This document shows positions 40,119 through 63,564 of a DNA stretch of 64,000 bases, piece by piece. The stretch is taken from the IMG/VR virus record IMGVR_UViG_3300043418_000072, positions 186,001-250,000 of that record. The stretch is one strand, 5' to 3'. Each line of letters starts with the position of its first letter. Positions within the stretch are counted from its first letter, which is position 1. A model generated the notes under the pieces. That model worked only from the letters and a program-made list of their open reading frames with translations. It was not told the DNA's origin and made no database searches. The position numbers were made by a program, and so were the translations under genes.

Positions 40119-40406
40119 TTATGACCCAATTTCCACGTCGGGACTACCTGCTGCAATAGCATGGCCGCAGCTGAGATCACTGCCCACAAAGGCAATACCT
40201 TTGCCATTGGCAATCACTGTGCTGCTAGCGGTAGCAACCGTTGCGGCTTGATGTGGGGGATGAGGGGCTCCGTACGGAGCATGACTGCTATCTAGACTGC
40301 CCTCTAATGCAGCACCTTGCCCGTTGATAATAACATCAGTACTAACGTCGCCACAAATTTGGCCGTCGCTAGTGTCTGCATCATTTAGGCGTGCTGCTGC
40401 TGGCAT
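40119..40406 (-). CDS. PAAR domain spike-tip protein
   Basis: MPAAARLND, V.INGQGAA, SCGH.IA.GSPDV. Confidence 0.9.
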   Translation of the reverse strand: MPAAARLNDADTSDGQICGDVSTDVIINGQGAALEGSLDSSHAPYGAPHPPHQAATVATASSTVIANGKGIAFVGSDLSCGHAIAAGSPDVEIGS

Positions 40407-40717
40407 TAAAGGATGATTCCAGGTTTAGCAATTACGTCAACACCAGTTGTGGTCTTAACATAATGCACACGCATTTGGTCCAATGACTCGGCATGGAACA
40501 TAACGTGTTGCTTACTGATGAAAACTTTGCAGTCTTCCTTAGCACTAAACAAACTCTGCATTAGACCAAGGCCTTGTTGGCTTGGCATAACTGTGCAAGG
40601 ACTAGCGACCTTCCAACCATCGTCGGTTGTCTCTAGTAATTTAGCAACGACTTCATCGCCGTTGACCATTTTGAAACTCACTACATCACCTGATGCGTAT
40701 TGTTGACTTACTAGCAT
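40406..40717 (-). CDS. Sm/LSm-like conserved phage protein
   Basis: VVSFKMVNGDEVVAKL...Y..TTGV. Confidence 0.6.
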   Translation of the reverse strand: MLVSQQYASGDVVSFKMVNGDEVVAKLLETTDDGWKVASPCTVMPSQQGLGLMQSLFSAKEDCKVFISKQHVMFHAESLDQMRVHYVKTTTGVDVIAKPGIIL

Positions 40718-49347: not shown

Positions 49348-50410
49348 TTACTTGAGTGATACGGGATGCTGGCCATTCAGTCCAGTCCCGTGTCATTAAC
49401 AGTTGAAAGTTATGTTCAACAATAGGCTTGATCTTGGCATAGATAACATCTTGATCTTGCTCACAAAGCCACTTAACCTGCTCAAATGCGGCAGTATAAC
49501 GCTCGTTATCGTCTTTAATCAAGTCATAAGACTCGTCAATTACTCCATCAAATGTTTTGAAGCCCAATGCACGTAGATTGTGCATAAACTTGTAACCTGT
49601 AAAGGCAATAAACAGTCGACGACCAATCATTGGCTTGGCTGTCTTCTCGGTGAAGCAGCTTAGTGTGTTATCAAAGTCAGTTTCTGCAATGATACTGTAT
49701 GCTGTTTCGTTGAATGTCTTGATAGGAATGATCTGACTTAGGTGTACACGTTGCCCGCAATAGTCTGCCCAGTCGGCAGTGCCAATGGTTTGGCCAATTG
49801 GCGTTGTTCCTTCTTCCCAGATAAAATAATCCTTGGCATAGAATTCGCCTTCTTTCCAGTCGCCACCGTAAGTCATTACAACTTTGTCATTTAACTGGTT
49901 ATCGTTAACTGCCTTAAACACAAAGTCTCTATGTGGCTTGGGACTGCCTAGCAAGGCATCGAAGTACTTGGGCTTGGTAGCAGAGTAGTTGATGTGCATT
50001 ACTTTGTCGGGCAATGCTTTGTAAATGTTCGCAGTTGTTTTAAACCAGTCGCCCCAGCATAGGATGTGACTGTTAATGTCATCTCTGTCGTTTACTGCAC
50101 CGGGTAGCATCCAGTAGACATTGTCATGATGACATTGGTCCCAAATTTGCCAATGGAAGTTGTGCAATTCGCTTTCAAAGGTGAAAACTAAATCACTAAT
50201 GTAACTTAAACGGTTTATCTTATCTTCGAATCCAACGTAGGCTGTGTCAAAGTCACAGTGTAGTCGGTGTGTAGTAAATGCTATCTTAGTGTCAACTTGT
50301 GCTGCTTCATATTCGTCAATGCTGTGACAAATTGTGTATGGGCGGTTGAACTGTATTTTTGGAAGCCACTCTAAGTCAATAATCTGACTATCACTGTAAA
50401 CTAGAATCAT
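49325..50410 (-). CDS. phage glycosyltransferase-like protein (family member 3)
   Basis: FDALLG..KPHRD, SQIIP, IIAET...TEKTAKPMIGRRLF, GFKTF..VIDESYD; closest to 7427. Confidence 0.55.
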   Translation of the reverse strand: MILVYSDSQIIDLEWLPKIQFNRPYTICHSIDEYEAAQVDTKIAFTTHRLHCDFDTAYVGFEDKINRLSYISDLVFTFESELHNFHWQIWDQCHHDNVYWMLPGAVNDRDDINSHILCWGDWFKTTANIYKALPDKVMHINYSATKPKYFDALLGSPKPHRDFVFKAVNDNQLNDKVVMTYGGDWKEGEFYAKDYFIWEEGTTPIGQTIGTADWADYCGQRVHLSQIIPIKTFNETAYSIIAETDFDNTLSCFTEKTAKPMIGRRLFIAFTGYKFMHNLRALGFKTFDGVIDESYDLIKDDNERYTAAFEQVKWLCEQDQDVIYAKIKPIVEHNFQLLMTRDWTEWPASRITQVINSTIVG

Positions 50411-50783
50411 TCTTTGCTCGATAATTTTCAATTGCTGCTTTGATTGCATCCTCAGCTAAGATGCTACAATGGATTTTAACTGGTGGTAGAGCTAGCTCGC
50501 CTGCGATCTCACTGTTTGTGATGCTTGCTGCTTCGGACAGACTTTTTCCTTTAACCCACTCAGTAACCAATGAGCTGCTTGCAATAGCACTCCCGCAACC
50601 ATAAGTCTTAAAACGTGCATCGGTGATAATTCCATTCGAGTCTACCTTTATTTGTAATTTCATTACGTCGCCACAAGCGGGTGCGCCAACCATACCAGTG
50701 CCAACATCGCTGTCCTCACTCGCAAAAGAACCCACATTACGTGGGTTCTCATAGTGATCAATTACCTTGTCTGAATATGCCAT
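50391..50783 (-). CDS. iscU: Fe-S cluster scaffold IscU
   Basis: YSDKVIDHYENPRNVG, APACGDVM, FKTYGCGSA, LPPVKIHCS. Confidence 0.98.
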   Translation of the reverse strand: MAYSDKVIDHYENPRNVGSFASEDSDVGTGMVGAPACGDVMKLQIKVDSNGIITDARFKTYGCGSAIASSSLVTEWVKGKSLSEAASITNSEIAGELALPPVKIHCSILAEDAIKAAIENYRAKNDSSLQ

Positions 50784-51924: not shown

Positions 51925-52452
51925 TTATTCCCAGATACCTTTTAGATATTTAGCCTGATTTAAAGTTTTTTCAAGATCTATTTTAGCTAGATCTAACATG
52001 ATACTATTATCTGTTATTCTAGCATCTAATACGTCAACTGTAAACATGTCATCGCGCTTAATTGCTCGATTTCTGTTGTGTACGTAATAGATTTTATCCT
52101 GTGTTAACTTACTTAGTGTCGTATCGTTTCGGTATAAATTCTGTGCTTGCTTCAAGCGGCCAGTTTGATATAGCAACGAGTACGTCACAGCGGATTGTTT
52201 GCAAGTAAACGTGGCCATCAACTCAGTGAAGTCGTTGAATAGTTGCCAGACACCTGCTGACTGTTTTATAGAGTGCTTACCAACTTGCCATCCATCCTTA
52301 GTGGGGATGATCAAGGGTTCGCTTTTTATTAGTTTTTGAGTTTCATTTTTAGTCCAGGTTTTGACATATTGTGCAGCTAAATCTACTGCTACCATTGCCT
52401 CGACTATTTGCCCATTAGTTATGGGATTTTTTCTTGTACGTGATTTGGCCAT
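51925..52452 (-). CDS. conserved hypothetical protein
   Basis: Clean ORF in a late operon. Confidence 0.7.
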   Translation of the reverse strand: MAKSRTRKNPITNGQIVEAMVAVDLAAQYVKTWTKNETQKLIKSEPLIIPTKDGWQVGKHSIKQSAGVWQLFNDFTELMATFTCKQSAVTYSLLYQTGRLKQAQNLYRNDTTLSKLTQDKIYYVHNRNRAIKRDDMFTVDVLDARITDNSIMLDLAKIDLEKTLNQAKYLKGIWE

Positions 52453-52627
52453 CTTGATTCTTTCTCAACAATACATCTTTGTTGACTAATTGATTTGCAA
52501 TGTGAATTTCGCGCTCGTTCAGGTCGGCCCGTTTAATTATTTCGTGTTCATTAAATTTGCCCAACACATCCGCTTCTTCGTTTGTGATGGACAATCTAAT
52601 GTGATTTAATAGTTCAACAATTTTCAT
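52415..52627 (-). CDS. small winged-helix-like protein
   Basis: ITNEE...L.ERE..IANQLVNKDVL.R. Confidence 0.6.
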   Translation of the reverse strand: MKIVELLNHIRLSITNEEADVLGKFNEHEIIKRADLNEREIHIANQLVNKDVLLRKNQDGQITYKKKSHN

Positions 52628-52881
52628 TTGTTGACGAAGTTAACTAGCACAACAACAAAACCGGAGATCAACACGCCAATGATTGCTGTACCAATAGTGA
52701 TAATTGTTTTGTTTGATGCGTCAGGAGCAGCGGCAAGCGATTCTTTAATACTCACGATTAAATCCTCAACGCGACTCATTCTTTCATCAAGACTGTTTAG
52801 CTTAGTGTCCAAATTCTTATACCTTTCAGCACATAATTCTACGTGCGCTTCAAGATTCTCTTTTTCAATTTCCGTCGCCAT
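52624..52881 (-). CDS. coiled-coil protein with a C-terminal TM segment
   Basis: LEAHVELCAERY coiled coil; TM at C-terminus; AAGGA RBS. Confidence 0.7.
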   Translation of the reverse strand: MATEIEKENLEAHVELCAERYKNLDTKLNSLDERMSRVEDLIVSIKESLAAAPDASNKTIITIGTAIIGVLISGFVVVLVNFVNK

Positions 52882-52912
52882 TGCGATATTCCTTATTTGT
52901 TAATCAGATAAC

Positions 52913-52973
52913 AATGCTGTTGAGTGTGCCAAAGTGTGTGCCATAAAAGAGTGCCTGTGTGTGCCGTAGCATT
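52913..52973 (-). repeat. four GGCAC repeats enclosed by an AATGCT/AGCATT stem in a late-gene leader
   Basis: GTGCC on the plus strand at 52926, 52938, 52951 and 52961; inverted hexamers at 52913-52918 and 52968-52973. Confidence 0.7.
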
Positions 52974-53418
52974 AAATATTATTTAAGTCTATTGCCAGGT
53001 TTTTAAAGTACACATTTTTTATCGCGCCATGCGGATAAAAGATAGGCAACATAAAACGAGCTGTTTCTGCCAATCCGGTTACAACAGGAATTTGTTCAAA
53101 GTCAGTTTCTAGGCCACCTTGTGGATTGTCTCCTACTAGGAAAACGTCTTGGTGCTCAATTGCAAAGGTCCAGGCCCATATTTTATGTCGCCCTTGGTAG
53201 TATTCCCCAAAGTTCCAACCATCTGCTAGATTACTTTCTGTGCAAATTGGACCATTGATCATGAGAGGCTGAGTTCTAAGACCCATTGTCTGCAATACCG
53301 TTTCCCAGTTACGTTGCTGATTTCTTTCAAACTCTTGCTCAGGTCTATAGCGGGTCACACCAGTGGCAGTAATGTCCACTAGTGTGTATCCTGTATAAAA
53401 CTGTAGTTCTCGGTTCAT
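52972..53418 (-). CDS. conserved late hypothetical protein
   Basis: TLVDITATG...RNQQRNWET..Q..GLR.QP; ATAAATA 5 nt before ATG 53418. Confidence 0.75.
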   Translation of the reverse strand: MNRELQFYTGYTLVDITATGVTRYRPEQEFERNQQRNWETVLQTMGLRTQPLMINGPICTESNLADGWNFGEYYQGRHKIWAWTFAIEHQDVFLVGDNPQGGLETDFEQIPVVTGLAETARFMLPIFYPHGAIKNVYFKNLAIDLNNI

Positions 53419-53437
53419 GTAGATATTTATGTCCAAC

Positions 53438-53462
53438 AAAAAAGGCAGTATAAAACTGCCTT
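53438..53462 (-). terminator. intrinsic terminator
   Basis: AAGGCAGT/ACTGCCTT stem followed by a T run on the minus strand. Confidence 0.8.
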
Positions 53463-53481
53463 CGTTGCTGAGTGTTAACTC

Positions 53482-53925
53482 TTATGCTAGCTTTAAGCCG
53501 CCTGTACTAGCAACTGATACGCTAGACACAGTGCTGTTACCGTATACACCAAGTTGTGTAATGTTTGCACGAATATATGCTTGCAATTCTGCATCTGTCC
53601 ATGCACTGTGTTCTACTAATGCGCTTAGTTGATTGCTGCCGCTTTCAACTTGGTATGCCACAACAGTGTTACGTTGTTGAATCACTCCGAGCATCTGCGA
53701 TACTAAACCAACGTTACCTGTTGTACGGTTAATGCCGCTTTCAAGAGTTAAGTTGCTTGCAGCATACCCGCCAACACCTGTAATCTTATATGCAGTGATG
53801 CGGCCACTCATGCCAGGTGCAATAATGCCAGTGGCAGTACGTGCTGAGCCGTCTGTGTTACTATCAATGTCTGTTGCAACTACTGCGGTTGCATCGCCGT
53901 TTACTTTTAATGCGCCTAAGGCCAT
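53482..53925 (-). CDS. putative virion structural (decoration-like) protein
   Basis: Own late promoter, GGAG RBS and terminator; MALGALKVNG shared with its neighbour. Confidence 0.6.
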   Translation of the reverse strand: MALGALKVNGDATAVVATDIDSNTDGSARTATGIIAPGMSGRITAYKITGVGGYAASNLTLESGINRTTGNVGLVSQMLGVIQQRNTVVAYQVESGSNQLSALVEHSAWTDAELQAYIRANITQLGVYGNSTVSSVSVASTGGLKLA

Positions 53926-54005: not shown

Positions 54006-54404
54006 TTAAGCGAATGTGAATGTACCAGCGCCGTTCAACACGCTAGATGAAGTAACTGTCAAGTTACCAGCACCCATGCCTGTTGCAGATGCAACTGCAT
54101 CCTTCAAAGCACCGTAAGCACCAGATGTTGTTGCACCTGCGCCTGCGTTGAATGTAGCAGCATCAACAATAACACACAAAGATGCGTTAGTTTGTGCGCC
54201 TGCCCATACGATAGAACCCAATGTTTCTACTGCACGGATACCTTGGTCGTAGCCACCTTCAACCAATGGTGCAGATTGACTTGTACCACCTGTTGCTGCT
54301 GTGAAGCCAGACTGGCTGTCAGCAATTTTAAGAACCAATGGTTGGTAACCTTGGAACGCACCTGCGGCTGCTTTGCCGTTTACTTTTACTTGTCCTAATG
54401 CCAT
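54006..54404 (-). CDS. putative virion structural (decoration-like) protein
   Basis: MALGQVKVNG; Ala/Gly/Thr-rich; own promoter and terminator. Confidence 0.6.
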   Translation of the reverse strand: MALGQVKVNGKAAAGAFQGYQPLVLKIADSQSGFTAATGGTSQSAPLVEGGYDQGIRAVETLGSIVWAGAQTNASLCVIVDAATFNAGAGATTSGAYGALKDAVASATGMGAGNLTVTSSSVLNGAGTFTFA

Positions 54405-57367: not shown

Positions 57368-59790
57368 TTGATTCTCTTCATTTTACGCCATAGTGTTTCG
57401 GCTATGTCAATTTTGCTTTCAGCCATTGCTGGTTGTGCTGCTGCTGCGGCTTGTACTTTCTTGTTGTAAGCGTCCACTTCGGCAGGGGTTGCACCACCCG
57501 AAACAACCTTAGGTTGCTTTGGTTGCGCTGGTGTTGCTGGCTTAGCTGCTGTAGGAGTTGTGTTTACAGTAGTTGTAGTCTTACCGTAGCCGCCCATTTG
57601 CTGACCAAAGTTTGGTGCTGCTTTAGGAGCTGCTGGTTTAATTCCGGCCATCTTAGCTGCTGACGCATAATCAAATCCAGTTGATCCAGTTACCGGGGTT
57701 GGCTTTGCTGCTGGAGCAGTTGTGGTAGGAGCGGGTGTAGCTTGCGCTGTTGCTGCCGGAGCAGGTGTAGCTTGCGCTGTTGCTGCCGGAGCAGGTGTGG
57801 CTGCTGGCTGTTGTGCTGCTGCATATTGCGAACGTAAATTGTTCATCGCTGCGCCTGCTGTTTTAGATGCATCTGCAGGTGGTGCTTTTGCTCCGCCGGT
57901 GCTTGCTGCATTGTACGAGTCAACTGCTTGACCTGCTTGCTGTGCGCCAGCGCCTTTTAGCAAACTAGATAAGAATCCGCCCTTTGTGGCGTTTGCGGCC
58001 TGTGACGATTTGTCAAGCGGGATATTCATGTCGGCGAATACGCTGTTAATTAAGTTATCCTTGACACCTTGGTCTTTAAGAAACTTAACTAGGTCTTCGC
58101 TGTTTACAGTCGGGGCTGCTGCTAACTTTGCGCCACGACGCCAATTCATGTCTAGCTTATCGTAAGTGATATTGTTAGTTGCTGCGTCTGCGCCAGCTGC
58201 GGCAATACGTTTTAGCGGTGCTGTTGCTTTACCAATTGCTGCGCCAGCTTGTTGGTTAAACGACTTTAGCTTATCTAATGCACCTTCGTTTAAACTTGCT
58301 TTAGCGATTGCACGGAAAATAGCTTTACGACCAGATTCTGTAATCTGTACGCCACCACGTGCTTTGCCCATACCTTCGCGTAAGACCCACATACGGATAG
58401 TCATGTCACGATCAATGTAGCTTTCACGTAAACGGATACCGTTTGCTGCGGCTCTGTTTAAACGATCAATGTAGGCATTACTAGTTGGTACATAGTTTCC
58501 TTGGGCACCTTGTTGAGTTGCGTAATCTGCGTCTACTTTATCCTGCACCGTTTTGTTTAATTCAACTTGGTTGCGGGCTTGCTGTGCAAAATCTGTAGAC
58601 GGTTCTGCAACTGGTGTTGCGGCTTGCTGTGCTGCGCTTATGTTTGATGTTCGACCACTTAATTCGTCGGCTTGTGCTTGCGGCATTGTGCTAGACGCAG
58701 TTGGTCCACCTGCGCCAACCCCATTGGCATAAACATTACTGCCAGTCTCTGCAGGGATATTGATATTTTGTCCTACTGCAATCTTGTGTACATCAGTGAT
58801 CTCTGGGTTAGCAGCTTGTAATTCTTCTACTGATACACCATTGGCTTTGGCAATCTGACTCAGTGACTCACCTTTTGTTACAGTGTGTTGAATTACTTCG
58901 CCTGCATCAACTCCGCCCATGTCTACACTACCAGCGCCAGTTGGCTGTAAGCTATTGCTAACCGAAATATCTTGTAACTGCGCTGCTGGCATTCCAGTAG
59001 CTTGCTCAATTGCTGTTTTACCCGCTTCATCTGCATCAAGCCACTGCTGTGCTGCATCTACATCTGCTTGTGCGTTCATTGCTGCATCGGCGTCAGGTAA
59101 TTGTAAATCTTGGCTTGCTTCTGGCTCAGCTGCTGCATCCGGCTCTGTAGTTGCTGCATCTGGTGCATCGGCTAATAAGTCTTTTGCCACGTGCATAGCT
59201 GCTACAGTTCCGCCTGTTGCTAATGCGCTACCAACTGCGCTAGAGAATTTGTTACCTTGCAACATTTTGTTAGCAAATGTTAATCCTGCTGCGATACCAA
59301 CTGGGCCAAGGCCCGAACCTGCTAAACCCGCAAGACCAACTACGATTGCTTTAATAGCAAGAGCCATGCCCGGTACTTTACTTAATTCACGGTACCAATC
59401 AAGCGCCTGTTGCACCTTGCCTGCGTCGCCGCCTGCTGCTGACATAATTTCTTTTTGCGCTTGGTCGATCATTGCATCTAAGCCAGCAACTGGTCCAGAA
59501 TTACCAATCCAGTTACCAACGTCTTTAAATGCAGAAGATACTTTACCAGCAACGTCAACGCCTTTACCTAATAGGGTACGGTTGCTTGCTTGATCGTCTG
59601 TAGAGAATTCTGTGTTTGCACCTGCTGCTGCGCCGTCGGCTACACGCTGAAATGCTTGTTTGACTTGATCTTGTGTTAGGTCTGCTTCTTTAAGCAAGCG
59701 ACCGAGATTGTACAATTTCTTGTAATTTGGATCTTCAATTAATCGTTGCTTTGCTCTTACATTTTCCGATAGGATGCTGTTAATTCTCAT
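57364..59790 (-). CDS. large LysM-domain virion (ejection-like) protein
   Basis: HTVTKGESLSQIAKANGVSVEELQAANPEI...IAVGQNINIP (LysM); hydrophobic Gly-rich hairpin; Ala/Pro-rich linkers; MRINSILSE leader. Confidence 0.8.
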   Translation of the reverse strand: MRINSILSENVRAKQRLIEDPNYKKLYNLGRLLKEADLTQDQVKQAFQRVADGAAAGANTEFSTDDQASNRTLLGKGVDVAGKVSSAFKDVGNWIGNSGPVAGLDAMIDQAQKEIMSAAGGDAGKVQQALDWYRELSKVPGMALAIKAIVVGLAGLAGSGLGPVGIAAGLTFANKMLQGNKFSSAVGSALATGGTVAAMHVAKDLLADAPDAATTEPDAAAEPEASQDLQLPDADAAMNAQADVDAAQQWLDADEAGKTAIEQATGMPAAQLQDISVSNSLQPTGAGSVDMGGVDAGEVIQHTVTKGESLSQIAKANGVSVEELQAANPEITDVHKIAVGQNINIPAETGSNVYANGVGAGGPTASSTMPQAQADELSGRTSNISAAQQAATPVAEPSTDFAQQARNQVELNKTVQDKVDADYATQQGAQGNYVPTSNAYIDRLNRAAANGIRLRESYIDRDMTIRMWVLREGMGKARGGVQITESGRKAIFRAIAKASLNEGALDKLKSFNQQAGAAIGKATAPLKRIAAAGADAATNNITYDKLDMNWRRGAKLAAAPTVNSEDLVKFLKDQGVKDNLINSVFADMNIPLDKSSQAANATKGGFLSSLLKGAGAQQAGQAVDSYNAASTGGAKAPPADASKTAGAAMNNLRSQYAAAQQPAATPAPAATAQATPAPAATAQATPAPTTTAPAAKPTPVTGSTGFDYASAAKMAGIKPAAPKAAPNFGQQMGGYGKTTTTVNTTPTAAKPATPAQPKQPKVVSGGATPAEVDAYNKKVQAAAAAQPAMAESKIDIAETLWRKMKRIK
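57728..57798. repeat. 30-bp in-frame tandem repeat (about 2.4 copies, ATPAPAATAQ)
   Basis: GGAGC(A/G)GGTGTAGCTTGCGCTGTTGCTGCC repeated. Confidence 0.85.
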
Positions 59791-62602: not shown

Positions 62603-63564
62603 TATCGTTGATCTTCTAAGTTAGCTGCTTCAATTTGCGCCAACTGTTCTCGCTCTACATCACTAACAGTAATATTGCTGCCATCTTTTGTGGGCAAGAC
62701 ATTGCCTTGCACTGACCAGCATTTGGGTCGATCTAGGTTACAAAACAACCACACAAGGCGTTCAGCCGTTTCCCCAATCACTGCTCTTACTGCATCTCTA
62801 TCGGATGTACTTGAGTATGTAAAGATACTAGTGCCATATACACTGTGGAACAATCCTGCTAGGCATACATCAATGTTTTGCTTTTTGTTTTGCAGAATCT
62901 GATACGTGCCCATTAAATGACTTTTTAGTGTGCCTTTGGCGTGCTGTGTTTTATCTGCGCCAATTTGATTAAGCAAGGCTGTGTATTTTGCTTCAATGAT
63001 ATCTGGTGCAGAATCTAAACGTATCTTGTATACTAACACTTCTCTCAGCTCATTGCAAGTCTTACTAACAGGTCTGGCTGCATGTAATTGGTTGCAGGGG
63101 AATTTCACAATGCGCCTAAATCTTGGTATTACTGACTGCTGGATATCTTTACCCTCTATATCAAGGATAACGGTTTCTCCTGCCCAGTTCATTTGCCATT
63201 CTCTATTGAGATAGAGCATGACTGTGTATTCCCCATCTCGGTTGCTGTCTGTGTGCATTGCACCTTCGGTGCCAAACGTATATGCGTTTACGTAACATCG
63301 TAACAGTTTACATGGCTCTACAATAATGTCACGTTTGATAACGTCCCAAACTTGTGATTCTAATTCGTAGCCGGGCTTATTGTAAAACTTATGTGAAACG
63401 TCATCTACTCCGTTTAGTCCGCCATCAGCAATACCATGATGCCAATGGTTCAAGGAAGACTTGACGTTACCTGCCCAGTAGTAACTAAAACGAAATCGAC
63501 GATACTTGTTCCATAATTCAATGGCTGTTGTATCGTCGATTGCTGAATCAAAAACTTTAATCAT
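62602..63564 (-). CDS. 2OG-Fe(II) prolyl-hydroxylase-like domain fused to a DUF6817 (HD-like) domain
   Basis: MHTD...WAGET...LHAA...R; then H...L..HL.GT..IL...CLAGLFHSVYGT. Confidence 0.8.
   Translation of the reverse strand: MIKVFDSAIDDTTAIELWNKYRRFRFSYYWAGNVKSSLNHWHHGIADGGLNGVDDVSHKFYNKPGYELESQVWDVIKRDIIVEPCKLLRCYVNAYTFGTEGAMHTDSNRDGEYTVMLYLNREWQMNWAGETVILDIEGKDIQQSVIPRFRRIVKFPCNQLHAARPVSKTCNELREVLVYKIRLDSAPDIIEAKYTALLNQIGADKTQHAKGTLKSHLMGTYQILQNKKQNIDVCLAGLFHSVYGTSIFTYSSTSDRDAVRAVIGETAERLVWLFCNLDRPKCWSVQGNVLPTKDGSNITVSDVEREQLAQIEAANLEDQR

What the first reader, a model, noticed from the sequence alone, without database searches (positions are those of the whole stretch)
52913..52985. Stem-enclosed fourfold GGCAC repeat in the leader of a late operon
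Seen on minus, just after a TAAATA box: AAUGCU-AC-GGCACACACA-GGCACUC-UUUUAU-GGCACACAC-UUU-GGCACACUC-AAC-AGCAUU, ending about 30 nt before the start at 52881. Four direct repeats spaced 10-13 nt are held in a loop closed by a 6-bp stem, in a genome with very little non-coding DNA. Inference: this could be a multivalent binding platform for an RNA-binding protein (compare CsrB or TRAP logic) that sets the stoichiometry of head proteins, or DNA iterons (roughly one per helical turn) for an origin or packaging site.
Basis: seen in the sequence. Interest (0 to 1): 0.6.

Follow-up and report, generated by a model that had tools for sequence, protein, structure and literature searches.

The report
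Four-GGC leader of phage late mRNA
The fourfold GGCAC repeat is real and belongs to a previously undescribed, widely conserved 5' leader of a late phage messenger RNA, most likely a landing pad for a still unknown RNA-binding factor that tunes a small XhlA/holin-like membrane protein gene in a family of freshwater jumbo phages.

Summary
On the minus strand, a TAAATA box (52985-52980) precedes AATGCT (52973-52968), four GGCAC units (spacing 10, 13, 12 nt) and AGCATT (52918-52913). This lies 31 nt before ATG 52881.

The window is part of a 354-kb jumbo phage that encodes a gp55-type late sigma factor. TAAATA is its general late-promoter box.

The element occurs once in the genome. About 130 related freshwater viral and metagenomic contigs carry the same layout at the same place, between a 155-aa gene and an 85-aa XhlA-like membrane-protein gene:
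- a TAAATA box;
- a stem arm 5-8 nt later;
- usually exactly four GGC[A/U]C units, about 12 nt apart, with spacers almost free of G (1-2 %);
- the second stem arm;
- often a second hairpin;
- a Shine-Dalgarno sequence and ATG.

The closing stem pairs in 345 of 345 cells, including A-U/G-C swaps and 17-19 G.U pairs. This evidence, the strand-asymmetric G depletion and the variable spacing all favour RNA over DNA iterons.

The modules separate: one clade keeps the array without the stem, another keeps the stem without the array, and a few have neither. There is no Rfam match.

Best reading: a multivalent single-stranded RNA platform in a late-mRNA leader. The binder is unknown, and the adjacent winged-helix gene does not track the element.

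The parts
52980..52985 (-). TAAATA box, predicted gp55-type late promoter. It lies inside the last codons of the upstream ORF.
   Evidence: Present in all 56 aligned relatives, whether it is coding or overlaps the stop codon. Genome-wide, 89 of 202 TAAATA and 38 of 53 ATAAATA lie 5-120 nt upstream of a same-strand start. A late sigma factor is encoded.
52968..52973 (-). P1 5' arm AATGCT. It overlaps the TAA stop at 52972-52974 and contains an invariant AUG.
   Evidence: It starts 5-8 nt after the box in 68 distinct sequences, that is 0-3 nt from the inferred transcript start.
52961..52965 (-). GGC unit R1 (GGCAC)
52951..52955 (-). GGC unit R2 (GGCAC; GGCUC in most stem-bearing relatives)
52938..52942 (-). 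GGC unit R3 (GGCAC, usually within UAUGGCACA)
52926..52930 (-). GGC unit R4 (GGCAC)
52913..52918 (-). P1 3' arm AGCATT. It is in phase with the units (12 nt after R4) and resembles a fifth unit without the GG.
52898..52913 (-). P2 hairpin (TGTTA / TAACA) directly abutting P1
   Evidence: Most stem-bearing relatives have a hairpin at this position, with compensated arm sequences.
52889..52894 (-). Shine-Dalgarno-like AAGGAA
   Evidence: Purine-rich sequence at the same position in the relatives.
52624..52881 (-). Regulated gene: 85-aa protein with a coiled coil and a C-terminal TM segment (XhlA/holin-like)
   Evidence: phrog_1193, E 1.9e-5. The nearest named Atlas clusters are XhlA / putative holin. 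It follows the element in every relative.
52972..53418 (-). Upstream gene (148-155 aa, generic ferredoxin-like fold) whose 3' end carries the promoter box

Best explanation
The element is the 5' leader of a late mRNA.

Proposed course of events:
1. A gp55-type late promoter (TAAATA) starts transcription about 5-6 nt downstream of the box.
2. The transcript therefore begins 0-3 nt before the first stem arm.
3. The leader (about 90 nt here, against 15-25 nt for ordinary late genes of this phage) presents four GGC[A/U]C units about 12 nt apart.
4. The spacers lack G and so cannot fold, which keeps the units single-stranded.
5. In the ancestral form, which the window has, the array is closed by a 5-6-bp stem P1 at the very 5' end and followed by a small hairpin P2, the Shine-Dalgarno sequence and the start of an 85-aa XhlA/holin-like membrane-protein gene.
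6. The units most likely act as a multivalent single-stranded RNA platform for an oligomeric RNA-binding factor. A tetramer, two dimers or a ring are possibilities. The factor is encoded elsewhere in the phage or by the host.
7. Occupancy of the platform would set translation initiation and/or the stability of this late mRNA.
8. P1 is a separable 5'-terminal hairpin module, of the kind that protects the 5' end and holds the array in a closed loop.

Shown: conservation, uniqueness in the genome, position behind the promoter, base pairing of P1 and P2, and G depletion of the spacers.
Inferred: the transcript start, the existence and nature of the binder, and the direction of the effect.
For: Conservation and context
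- The same architecture is found at the same locus in relatives whose flanking protein is only 50-60 % identical: 44 of 69 distinct metagenomic intergenic regions have exactly four GGC units, 12 have three and 2 have five.
- Among 68 distinct stem-bearing sequences from 122 loci, 64 have exactly four units.
- 79 of 80 fetched viral contigs that match a sequence pattern of the element have it in the same gene context.
- A tree of the flanking protein places the stem-plus-array form in all deep branches, so it is ancestral.

Evidence that it acts as RNA
- Spacer composition is A 578, T 527, C 346, G 18. The P1 loop outside the GGC units is 2.2 % G. The depletion affects the sense strand only.
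- P1 pairs in 345 of 345 cells. Pair 1 is GC 62 / AU 5 / GU 2 and pair 3 is UA 52 / UG 17. The observed covariation score was reached by 0 of 500 shuffles.
- P2 shows compensated arms: CG 28 / UA 12 at one pair and UA 39 / AU 7 / CG 5 / UG 4 at the next. Its covariation score is 0.227, against 0.120 when shuffled and at most 0.086 when slid (arm variants).
- Unit spacing varies between 9 and 15 nt at each interval. A flexible strand tolerates this.

Link to the late promoter
- The distance from the box to the first GGC is 13-17 nt. The distance from the box to P1 is 5-8 nt.
- 24 ORFs have TAAATA-N4-6-ATG, which places the start site about 5-6 nt after the box.
- A late sigma factor is encoded (phrog_12791, E 5e-75; T4 gp55, E 7e-6).

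Single copy
- The element occurs only once in the genome.

Modularity
- One clade keeps the array without P1.
- Another keeps a 5' hairpin without the array.
- A few have an ordinary 15-17-nt leader.

Precedent
- The T4 gene 32 operator combines a 5' structure with an unstructured stretch of repeated short motifs bound cooperatively by a protein (PMC3014915).
Against: - No binder is identified. The phage encodes no recognisable CsrA, cold-shock, Hfq or S1 domain.
- All neighbouring genes, including the winged-helix p70, persist in relatives that lost the element.
The transcript start is therefore inferred.
- Thermodynamic folding does not favour P1: its probability is about 0.07-0.09. It also predicts weak pairing of the GGC units.
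- The units lie 38-52 nt from the start codon and do not overlap the Shine-Dalgarno sequence, so the route to translational control is not obvious.
- The element has been reduced or lost at least four or five times, so it is dispensable.
- I know of no RNA-binding protein with GGC[A/U]C specificity.
Confidence: 0.5

Rival explanations
1. DNA operator or iterons. The GGCAC/GTGCC repeats would be double-stranded DNA sites, at about +7 to +55 of the late promoter, for a DNA-binding protein such as the winged-helix p70 encoded two genes downstream. That protein would repress the promoter or serve as a centromere, origin or pac site, as in tubC/TubR or parC/ParR.
For: - There are four to five direct repeats with a period near one helical turn, and the element is single-copy in the genome.
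- A 70-aa protein with a winged-helix fold is encoded in the same gene string. Its model has pLDDT 83 and matches MecI/BlaI/MarR with TM 0.6-0.68.
- The distance to the promoter box is tightly kept.
Against: - The spacers lack G but hold 24 % C on the sense strand only. A duplex site gives no reason for this asymmetry.
- The period averages about 12 and varies by +-2 at each interval. Sites would not stay on one face of the helix.
- The flanking inverted repeat is imperfect as DNA in 17-19 of 69 sequences, yet always pairs as RNA through G.U.
- The P2 arms covary.
- p70 is retained at 57-79 % identity in relatives without the array.
- The array always accompanies the same downstream gene. An origin or pac site would not need that.
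- There is no GC-skew turn in the window.
Confidence: 0.12
2. Protein-independent unstructured leader. The G-poor, A/U/C-rich stretch would act by itself as a ribosome standby or S1-type translational enhancer, or as a Rho loading (rut-like) site that makes expression depend on translation or antitermination. The 5' hairpin would be a stabiliser.
For: - The C-over-G excess is extreme: 24 % against 1-2 % over about 50-60 nt.
- One clade has no consensus structure at all.
- The leader is long and untranslated.
- C residues are regularly spaced. By my own recollection of the rut literature (not checked here), rut sites are C-rich, G-poor and have C every 11-13 nt.
Against: - The most conserved feature is the GG of each unit, together with the count of four. 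Neither S1-type enhancers nor Rho, which prefers pyrimidines, would require these.
- Many relatives have C-poor, U-rich spacers.
- Other late genes of the phage manage with leaders of 15-25 nt, or with none.
Confidence: 0.15
3. Alternative-pairing or 5'-AUG switch. The invariant 5' arm (AUGCU) can pair fully with the 3' arm, or over 4 bp with any GGCA unit. Its AUG sits 2-5 nt from the transcript start, in a phage that makes many leaderless mRNAs. The array would then be a set of competing partners, or a short upstream reading frame, that controls ribosome entry at the 5' end.
For: - The 5' AUGC is invariant in 69 of 69 sequences, while the 3' arm varies between A and G.
- The 3' arm is in phase with the units, 11-13 nt after R4, and looks like a unit without the GG.
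- 24 genes have TAAATA-N4-6-ATG.
- Folding places the 5' arm on R1 in the optimum structure.
Against: - The clade without the 5' arm and its AUG still keeps four GGCA units.
- The upstream frame ranges from 5 to 60 or more codons, with no conserved peptide or stop position.
- The units are read in different frames.
Confidence: 0.1
4. A two-tier RNA G-quadruplex formed by the four GG tracts, with the closing stem offsetting the cost of the long loops.
For: - There are exactly four GG tracts in most sequences, and G is excluded everywhere else.
- The hosts live in cold water, which would favour weak structures (inference).
Against: - The C after each GG is invariant, and positions 4-5 are conserved as [A/U]C. 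A quadruplex does not need these.
- The loops are 8-12 nt long.
- 12 of 69 sequences, from several lineages, keep only three units.
- One clade lacks the closing stem.
Confidence: 0.04
5. A functionless remnant of tandem duplication in a tolerant intergenic spacer.
For: The element has been lost or shortened several times without change to the neighbouring genes.
Against: GGC, the number of units, the spacing, the G-free spacers and the distance to the promoter are all kept across lineages whose flanking protein is only about 50 % identical and whose spacer sequences have turned over completely.
Confidence: 0.02

Closest known systems
T4 gene 32 translational operator (PMC3014915)
   Same: - It is the leader of an mRNA of a T4-type phage.
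- It has a structured element at the 5' end, followed by an unstructured stretch carrying several copies of a short motif.
- A protein binds that stretch cooperatively to control translation and mRNA stability.
   Different: - There the 5' element is a pseudoknot and the motif is UUAAA in an A/U-rich stretch reaching the ribosome-binding site.
- The binder is the product of the regulated gene, an ssDNA-binding protein.
- Here the motif is GGC[A/U]C, the count is fixed at four, and the array ends 38-52 nt before the start codon.
- The regulated gene here encodes a small membrane protein that is unlikely to bind RNA.
TRAP-binding trp leader and CsrA-binding leaders / CsrB (my own knowledge, not tested here)
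   Same: Several copies of a short G-containing motif are displayed in single-stranded RNA, for a multisubunit or multivalent protein, in a 5' leader.
   Different: - TRAP uses 9-11 (G/U)AG triplets with 2-3-nt spacers.
- CsrA needs GGA, often in hairpin loops.
- Here the motif is GGC, with four units about 12 nt apart.
- No CsrA domain is found in the phage. TRAP was not searched for.
Centromere/iteron arrays such as tubC-TubR and parC-ParR (my own knowledge)
   Same: - Direct repeats of 10-12 nt lie at the head of an operon that also encodes a small winged-helix protein.
- The array is single-copy in its replicon.
   Different: - This element shows strand-asymmetric composition, variable spacing and G.U-compatible flanking stems.
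- There is no adjacent tubulin, actin or ParA gene.
- The winged-helix gene persists where the array is lost.
5'-terminal stabiliser hairpins of bacterial mRNAs, e.g. the ompA leader (my own knowledge)
   Same: The stem starts within a few nucleotides of the 5' end. It is retained as a simple hairpin in relatives that lost the array.
   Different: Here a 5-6-bp stem encloses a loop of about 50-65 nt, which is thermodynamically marginal on its own.

Membership tests
T4-type (gp55) late promoter | TATAAATA-like box about 6 nt upstream of the transcript start; a phage-encoded gp55-family sigma factor | tested here: met
   - The box here is cTTAAATAat. TAAATA is invariant in 56 relatives, and several have a perfect TATAAATA.
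- The box is enriched genome-wide upstream of gene starts.
- A gp55-like ORF is present.
- The transcript start itself was not mapped.
Any Rfam family | Covariance-model match | tested here: not met
   No match at E up to 10 over 52700-53200 on either strand.
CsrA/RsmA target or CsrB-like sponge | Multiple GGA motifs (ANGGA), often in hairpin loops; CsrA present | tested here: not met
   The units are GGC, never GGA. The phage has no CsrA domain. The host is unknown.
TRAP-regulated leader | 9-11 (G/U)AG triplets separated by 2-3 nt | tested here: not met
   There are four units about 12 nt apart with the motif GGC[A/U]C.
T4 gene 32-type operator | 5' pseudoknot plus UUAAA repeats reaching the ribosome-binding site, upstream of the ssDNA-binding protein gene | tested here: not met
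   - No pseudoknot is predicted.
- The motif differs.
- The downstream gene is XhlA-like.
- The resemblance is in logic only.
DNA iterons / centromere (parC, tubC, plasmid or phage origins) | Directly repeated duplex sites with fixed spacing, bound by a cognate protein encoded nearby; strand-symmetric constraint | tested here: not met
   - Spacing is 9-15 nt and variable.
- The sense strand holds 1-2 % G against 24 % C.
- The nearby winged-helix gene does not co-vary in presence with the array.
- Binding was not testable.
Sigma-54 promoter | TGGCAC-N5-TTGCW with strict GG-N10-GC spacing | tested here: not met
   R3 gives TGGCAC, but the next GC is one position off in the window (read directly). 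The R3-R4 spacing varies between 10 and 14 in the relatives.
Intrinsic terminator | GC-rich hairpin with a short loop, followed by a U run | tested here: not met
   No terminator-like site lies in the element. The nearest on this strand is at 53441-53463.
Rho utilisation (rut) site | About 60-80 nt, C-rich and G-poor, unstructured and untranslated; Rho-dependent termination downstream | tested here: inconclusive
   The composition fits. The conserved GG does not fit. Termination cannot be tested here.
RNA G-quadruplex | Four G tracts with short loops; no requirement for the flanking bases | tested here: inconclusive
   There are four GG tracts, but the loops are 8-12 nt, the following C is invariant, and variants with three units are common.

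The most novel reading that the evidence does not exclude
The array defines a new class of phage mRNA leader: a fixed set of four single-stranded GGC[A/U]C sites, held in a G-free loop at the extreme 5' end of a late transcript. An oligomeric phage or host protein would read these sites to time the synthesis of a holin-like lysis factor in uncultured freshwater jumbo phages. Such a system would have no described RNA family and no described protein partner.
Probability: 0.3. Interest if true: 0.75.

Novelty: new variant of a known kind. Interest (0 to 1): 0.6.

Why it matters
- It is a strongly conserved non-coding element, with more than 100 distinct sequences, in a family of 200-370-kb freshwater phages. 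The flanking 155-aa protein finds no match in the GenBank phage collection searched.
- It has no Rfam family, and I found no literature record of it.
- It gives a concrete handle on post-transcriptional control of late genes, possibly lysis genes, in jumbo phages, where such control is essentially unexplored.
- The motif is short and defined and the modules are separable. The array and the stem each occur alone in natural variants, so reporter and pull-down experiments are straightforward.
- If a dedicated binder exists, the pair would be a compact, orthogonal RNA-protein module.

Tried and rejected
- **Nucleotide similarity to GenBank phages** (near and distant): no match. The 155-aa protein also finds none.
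- **Rfam**: nothing.
- **Tandem Repeats Finder**: does not report the array, because the spacing is irregular.
- **Thermodynamic folding**: gives no support for the stem or for any structure (z 0.1). Only comparative analysis supports P1 and P2.
- **Sigma-54 promoter reading of TGGCAC**: rejected on spacing.
- **Sigma-70 promoter scan**: at chance level, and there is no terminator in the element.
- **Coding explanation**: rejected. The units fall in different frames, and the upstream frame is 5 to 60 or more codons long with no conserved peptide.
- **Antisense or trans partner in the phage**: no complementary TGCC/GCC array exists elsewhere.
- **Phage-encoded CsrA, cold-shock, Hfq or S1 domains**: none found.
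- **The 'Sm-like' ORF 40406-40717**: no support.
- **The upstream 155-aa protein**: only a generic ferredoxin-like fold (bS6, ACT, RRM-like; Z at most 6.7, within background). No claim is made from it.
- **treekit default tree build**: killed by the sandbox and replaced by FastTree.
- **Second covariance-model hit** at window 62868-62955: E 0.32, not significant.
- **Literature searches**: nothing found on this motif.
- **Complex prediction**: not used, because no protein pair is claimed to bind.

Full report
**1. The observation**

Read on the minus strand, the region holds, in order:
- a TAAATA box at 52985-52980;
- six bases of spacer;
- AATGCT at 52973-52968, whose first bases are also the TAA stop of the upstream ORF;
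- four GGCAC units starting at 52965, 52955, 52942 and 52930;
- AGCATT at 52918-52913;
- 31 nt further on, the ATG at 52881 of an 85-codon ORF.

GGCACWC is at chance frequency in the window as a whole (16 found, 14.4 expected), but a quarter of the copies lie in these 42 nt.

The window is bases 186001-250000 of a 354,098-bp viral record. Across that genome:
- The only other clusters of GGCAC are Gly-Thr-coding repeats.
- This is the only array of GGC with G-free spacers.
- It is the only significant match to a covariance model of the element (E 4.8e-12; the next hit has E 0.32).

Single-sequence folding does not support the stem. The stem is absent from the optimum structure, the energy is no better than that of shuffled sequence (z 0.1), and its pair probability stays below 0.1 from 5 to 37 C.

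**2. Genomic setting**

- The phage has no nucleotide relative among GenBank phages.
- It encodes a gp55-family late sigma factor (T4 gp55 E 7e-6; phrog_12791 E 5e-75).
- TAAATA is its dominant promoter-like motif. 89 of 202 copies, and 38 of 53 ATAAATA, lie 5-120 nt upstream of a same-strand start, usually 20-29 nt from the ATG.
- A further 24 ORFs have TAAATA-N4-6-ATG. I read these as leaderless late mRNAs.
  - This places the transcript start about 5-6 nt after the box.
  - The upstream 155-aa gene is one of these ORFs.
- The leader of the 85-aa gene would therefore begin one or two bases before AATGCT. It would be about 90 nt long, several times the norm for this phage.
- The 85-aa product has an N-terminal coiled coil and a C-terminal membrane segment.
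  - It matches phrog_1193 ('hemolysin', XhlA-type; E 1.9e-5).
  - Its nearest named Atlas clusters are XhlA / putative holin.
  - It is not a head protein.
- The genes that follow it:
  - a 70-aa protein with a winged-helix fold;
  - further small proteins, two of which match 'virion structural' PHROGs;
  - an IscU-like gene.

**3. Relatives**

- The 155-aa protein recovered 16 viral loci and 80 of 371 metagenomic loci, mostly from lake metagenomes.
- A sequence pattern of the element recovered 82 more viral contigs.
- The gene order 155-aa gene, intergenic region, 85-aa gene, 70-aa gene and onward is kept throughout.
- In 69 distinct metagenomic intergenic regions the commonest form repeats the window's layout. 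44 have exactly four GGC units at 9-15-nt spacing, 12 have three and 2 have five.
- Among 68 distinct stem-bearing sequences from 122 loci, 64 have exactly four units.
- The unit is GGC, then A or U, then mostly C.
- The modal spacings are 11, 12-13 and 13 nt, and the array spans 33-38 nt.
- The first GGC lies 13-17 nt after the box, and the last lies 38-52 nt before the ATG.
- Spacer sequences have turned over completely between lineages but remain almost free of G: 18 G in 1469 spacer bases against 346 C, and 2.2 % G in the loop outside the units.
- All viral pattern hits but one, a coding false positive, are in the same gene context. The element is tied to this one gene.

**4. Structure**

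- In the stem-bearing lineages RNAalifold finds the closing stem as the only consensus helix.
- On 69 sequences all 345 cells of its five pairs are standard pairs.
  - The outer pair is G-C in 62, A-U in 5 (the window's form, present in at least two separate lineages) and G.U in 2.
  - The third pair is U-A in 52 and U.G in 17.
  - None of 500 shuffles reaches the observed covariation score or the observed percentage of paired cells.
- As a DNA inverted repeat the arms would be imperfect in about a quarter of the sequences. As RNA they always pair.
- A second hairpin starts at the last base of the 3' arm in most of these sequences, with arm sequences that differ in a compensated way.
  - The arm variants are CGCU/AGCG, CGUAU/AUACG, CGUUC/GAACG, CACUU/AAGUG and, in the window, UGUUA/UAACA.
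  - On a model-guided alignment its three core pairs show CG 28 / UA 12 and UA 39 / AU 7 / CG 5 / UG 4.
  - The covariation score is 0.227, against 0.120 when shuffled and at most 0.086 when slid.
  - A third of the cells are unpaired, and the alignment is fitted to the model.
- The 3' arm lies 11-13 nt after the fourth unit. It is in phase with the array and resembles a fifth unit without the GG.
- The 5' AUGC is invariant, while its partner varies.

**5. Modularity and history**

- A tree of the 155-aa protein (FastTree, midpoint-rooted) puts the stem-plus-array form in all deep branches.
- One monophyletic clade has lost the stem. It keeps four GGCA units followed by an invariant ACAGAACCCU and has no consensus structure at all.
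- A group inside the window's own clade keeps a 5' hairpin at the same place but has lost the array.
- A few lineages have an ordinary leader of 15-17 nt.
- At least four or five independent reductions are implied.
- The stem and the array are therefore separable modules. Both are dispensable, and neither loss is accompanied by loss of a neighbouring gene.

**6. Interpretation**

Five observations point to function at the RNA level:
- the strand-asymmetric G depletion;
- the G.U-tolerant stem;
- the compensated second hairpin;
- the flexible spacing;
- the fixed position just inside the predicted transcript.

What is conserved inside the array is not pairing potential. It is four short sequence words kept single-stranded by the exclusion of G from everything around them. 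That is the signature of a multivalent binding site. I therefore take the element to be a platform for an oligomeric RNA-binding factor, with a separable 5'-terminal hairpin. That hairpin probably protects the 5' end and closes the array into a loop.

The nearest precedent in logic is the T4 gene 32 operator: a 5' structure followed by an unstructured stretch of repeated short motifs bound cooperatively (PMC3014915). The trp leader/TRAP and CsrA systems are comparable from my own knowledge. Membership in any of these families fails on motif, number and spacing.

The binder is unknown:
- The phage has no CsrA, cold-shock, Hfq or S1 domain.
- The winged-helix p70 does not track the element.
- The upstream protein has only a generic ferredoxin-like fold.

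Because the regulated gene looks like a holin-associated membrane protein, control of lysis timing is an attractive role, but it is inferred.

**7. Rivals**

- *DNA operator or iteron.* This remains possible, given the winged-helix neighbour and the single-copy array. It explains neither the asymmetry, nor the G.U pairs, nor the variable period.
- *Protein-independent unstructured leader* (enhancer, standby site or Rho loading site). This explains the composition but not the invariant GG or the count of four.
- *Switch based on the invariant 5' AUG and alternative pairing of the 5' arm with the units.* This is suggested by the leaderless-mRNA habit of the phage and by the unit-like 3' arm. It fails in the clade that lacks the arm yet keeps the array, and the upstream reading frame is not conserved.
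- *Two-tier G-quadruplex.* This is unlikely, given the invariant C, the long loops and the frequent three-unit variants.

**8. Limits**

- No expression data could be obtained.
- The transcript start, the binder and the direction of regulation are all inferred.
- The sequences are related, so shuffle-based significance overstates independence.
- The tree is from one short protein.

**9. Verdict**

The element is a real, conserved and previously undescribed cis-regulatory leader. Its anatomy is well defined, and its mode of action is plausible but unproven.

Noticed in passing
G000 genome-wide; in the window e.g. box about 53425-53430 with ATG 53418 (minus strand): 24 ORFs of 60 or more codons have TAAATA-N4-6-ATG, sharply peaked at gaps of 4-5 nt. 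This suggests that the phage makes many leaderless late mRNAs. The 155-aa gene upstream of the element is one of them.
   Followed up: partly
window 53441-53463 (minus strand): An intrinsic-terminator-like hairpin with a T run lies between the 147-aa ORF and the 155-aa ORF, immediately before the late box of the latter.
   Followed up: no
G000:C1 174391-174465, 179583-179981 and 280156-302664 (outside the window): Aragorn finds about 48 tRNA genes, a tRNA with a CUA (amber-reading) anticodon and a tmRNA-like gene in this phage genome.
   Followed up: no
window 50391-50783 (minus strand): An IscU/NifU-like Fe-S scaffold ORF (judged from its translation, not checked against a family library) lies in the same gene string as the regulated gene. 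It is conserved at 70-89 % identity in many relatives.
   Followed up: no
window 52415-52627 (minus strand): The 70-aa ORF folds as a winged helix (pLDDT 83; MecI/BlaI/MarR-like, TM 0.6-0.68). It matches a PHROG annotated 'virion structural protein'. It is kept in relatives that lack the GGC array.
   Followed up: partly
window 52906-52971 (minus strand): A 22-codon upstream frame starts at the ATG that overlaps the TAA stop (TAATG) and runs through all four units. In relatives the equivalent frame is 5 to 60 or more codons long (MLRHH-stop is the commonest), so no peptide is conserved. The AUG itself is invariant.
   Followed up: yes
window 52628-52903 (plus strand): A 91-codon antisense ORF overlaps the 85-aa gene and is slightly longer than it. 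A length-greedy gene caller picks it in place of the real gene.
   Followed up: partly
window 53482-53925 and 54006-54404 (minus strand): Two paralogous small ORFs (147 and 132 aa, both starting MALG..KVNG) have no family match. At least the first lies behind its own TAAATA box.
   Followed up: no
window 40119-40717 (minus strand): There is a PAAR-motif ORF at 40119-40406 (PF05488, E 1.7e-9).
   Followed up: yes
window 57728-57802: A 30-nt tandem repeat (2.5 copies, 95 % matches) lies inside the 808-aa ORF, which matches endolysin PHROGs over about residues 250-443. I read a LysM motif there from the translation, unconfirmed.
   Followed up: no
window 62868-62955 (minus strand): There is a weak second hit of the covariance model (16.6 bits, E 0.32) around a lone GGCACAC. 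I judge it to be chance.
   Followed up: partly
L014, L016, L029, L037 and the other 'clade 2' loci: In the clade without the closing stem, the array is followed by an invariant ACAGAACCCU box, in phase with the units, for which no pairing partner was found.
   Followed up: partly
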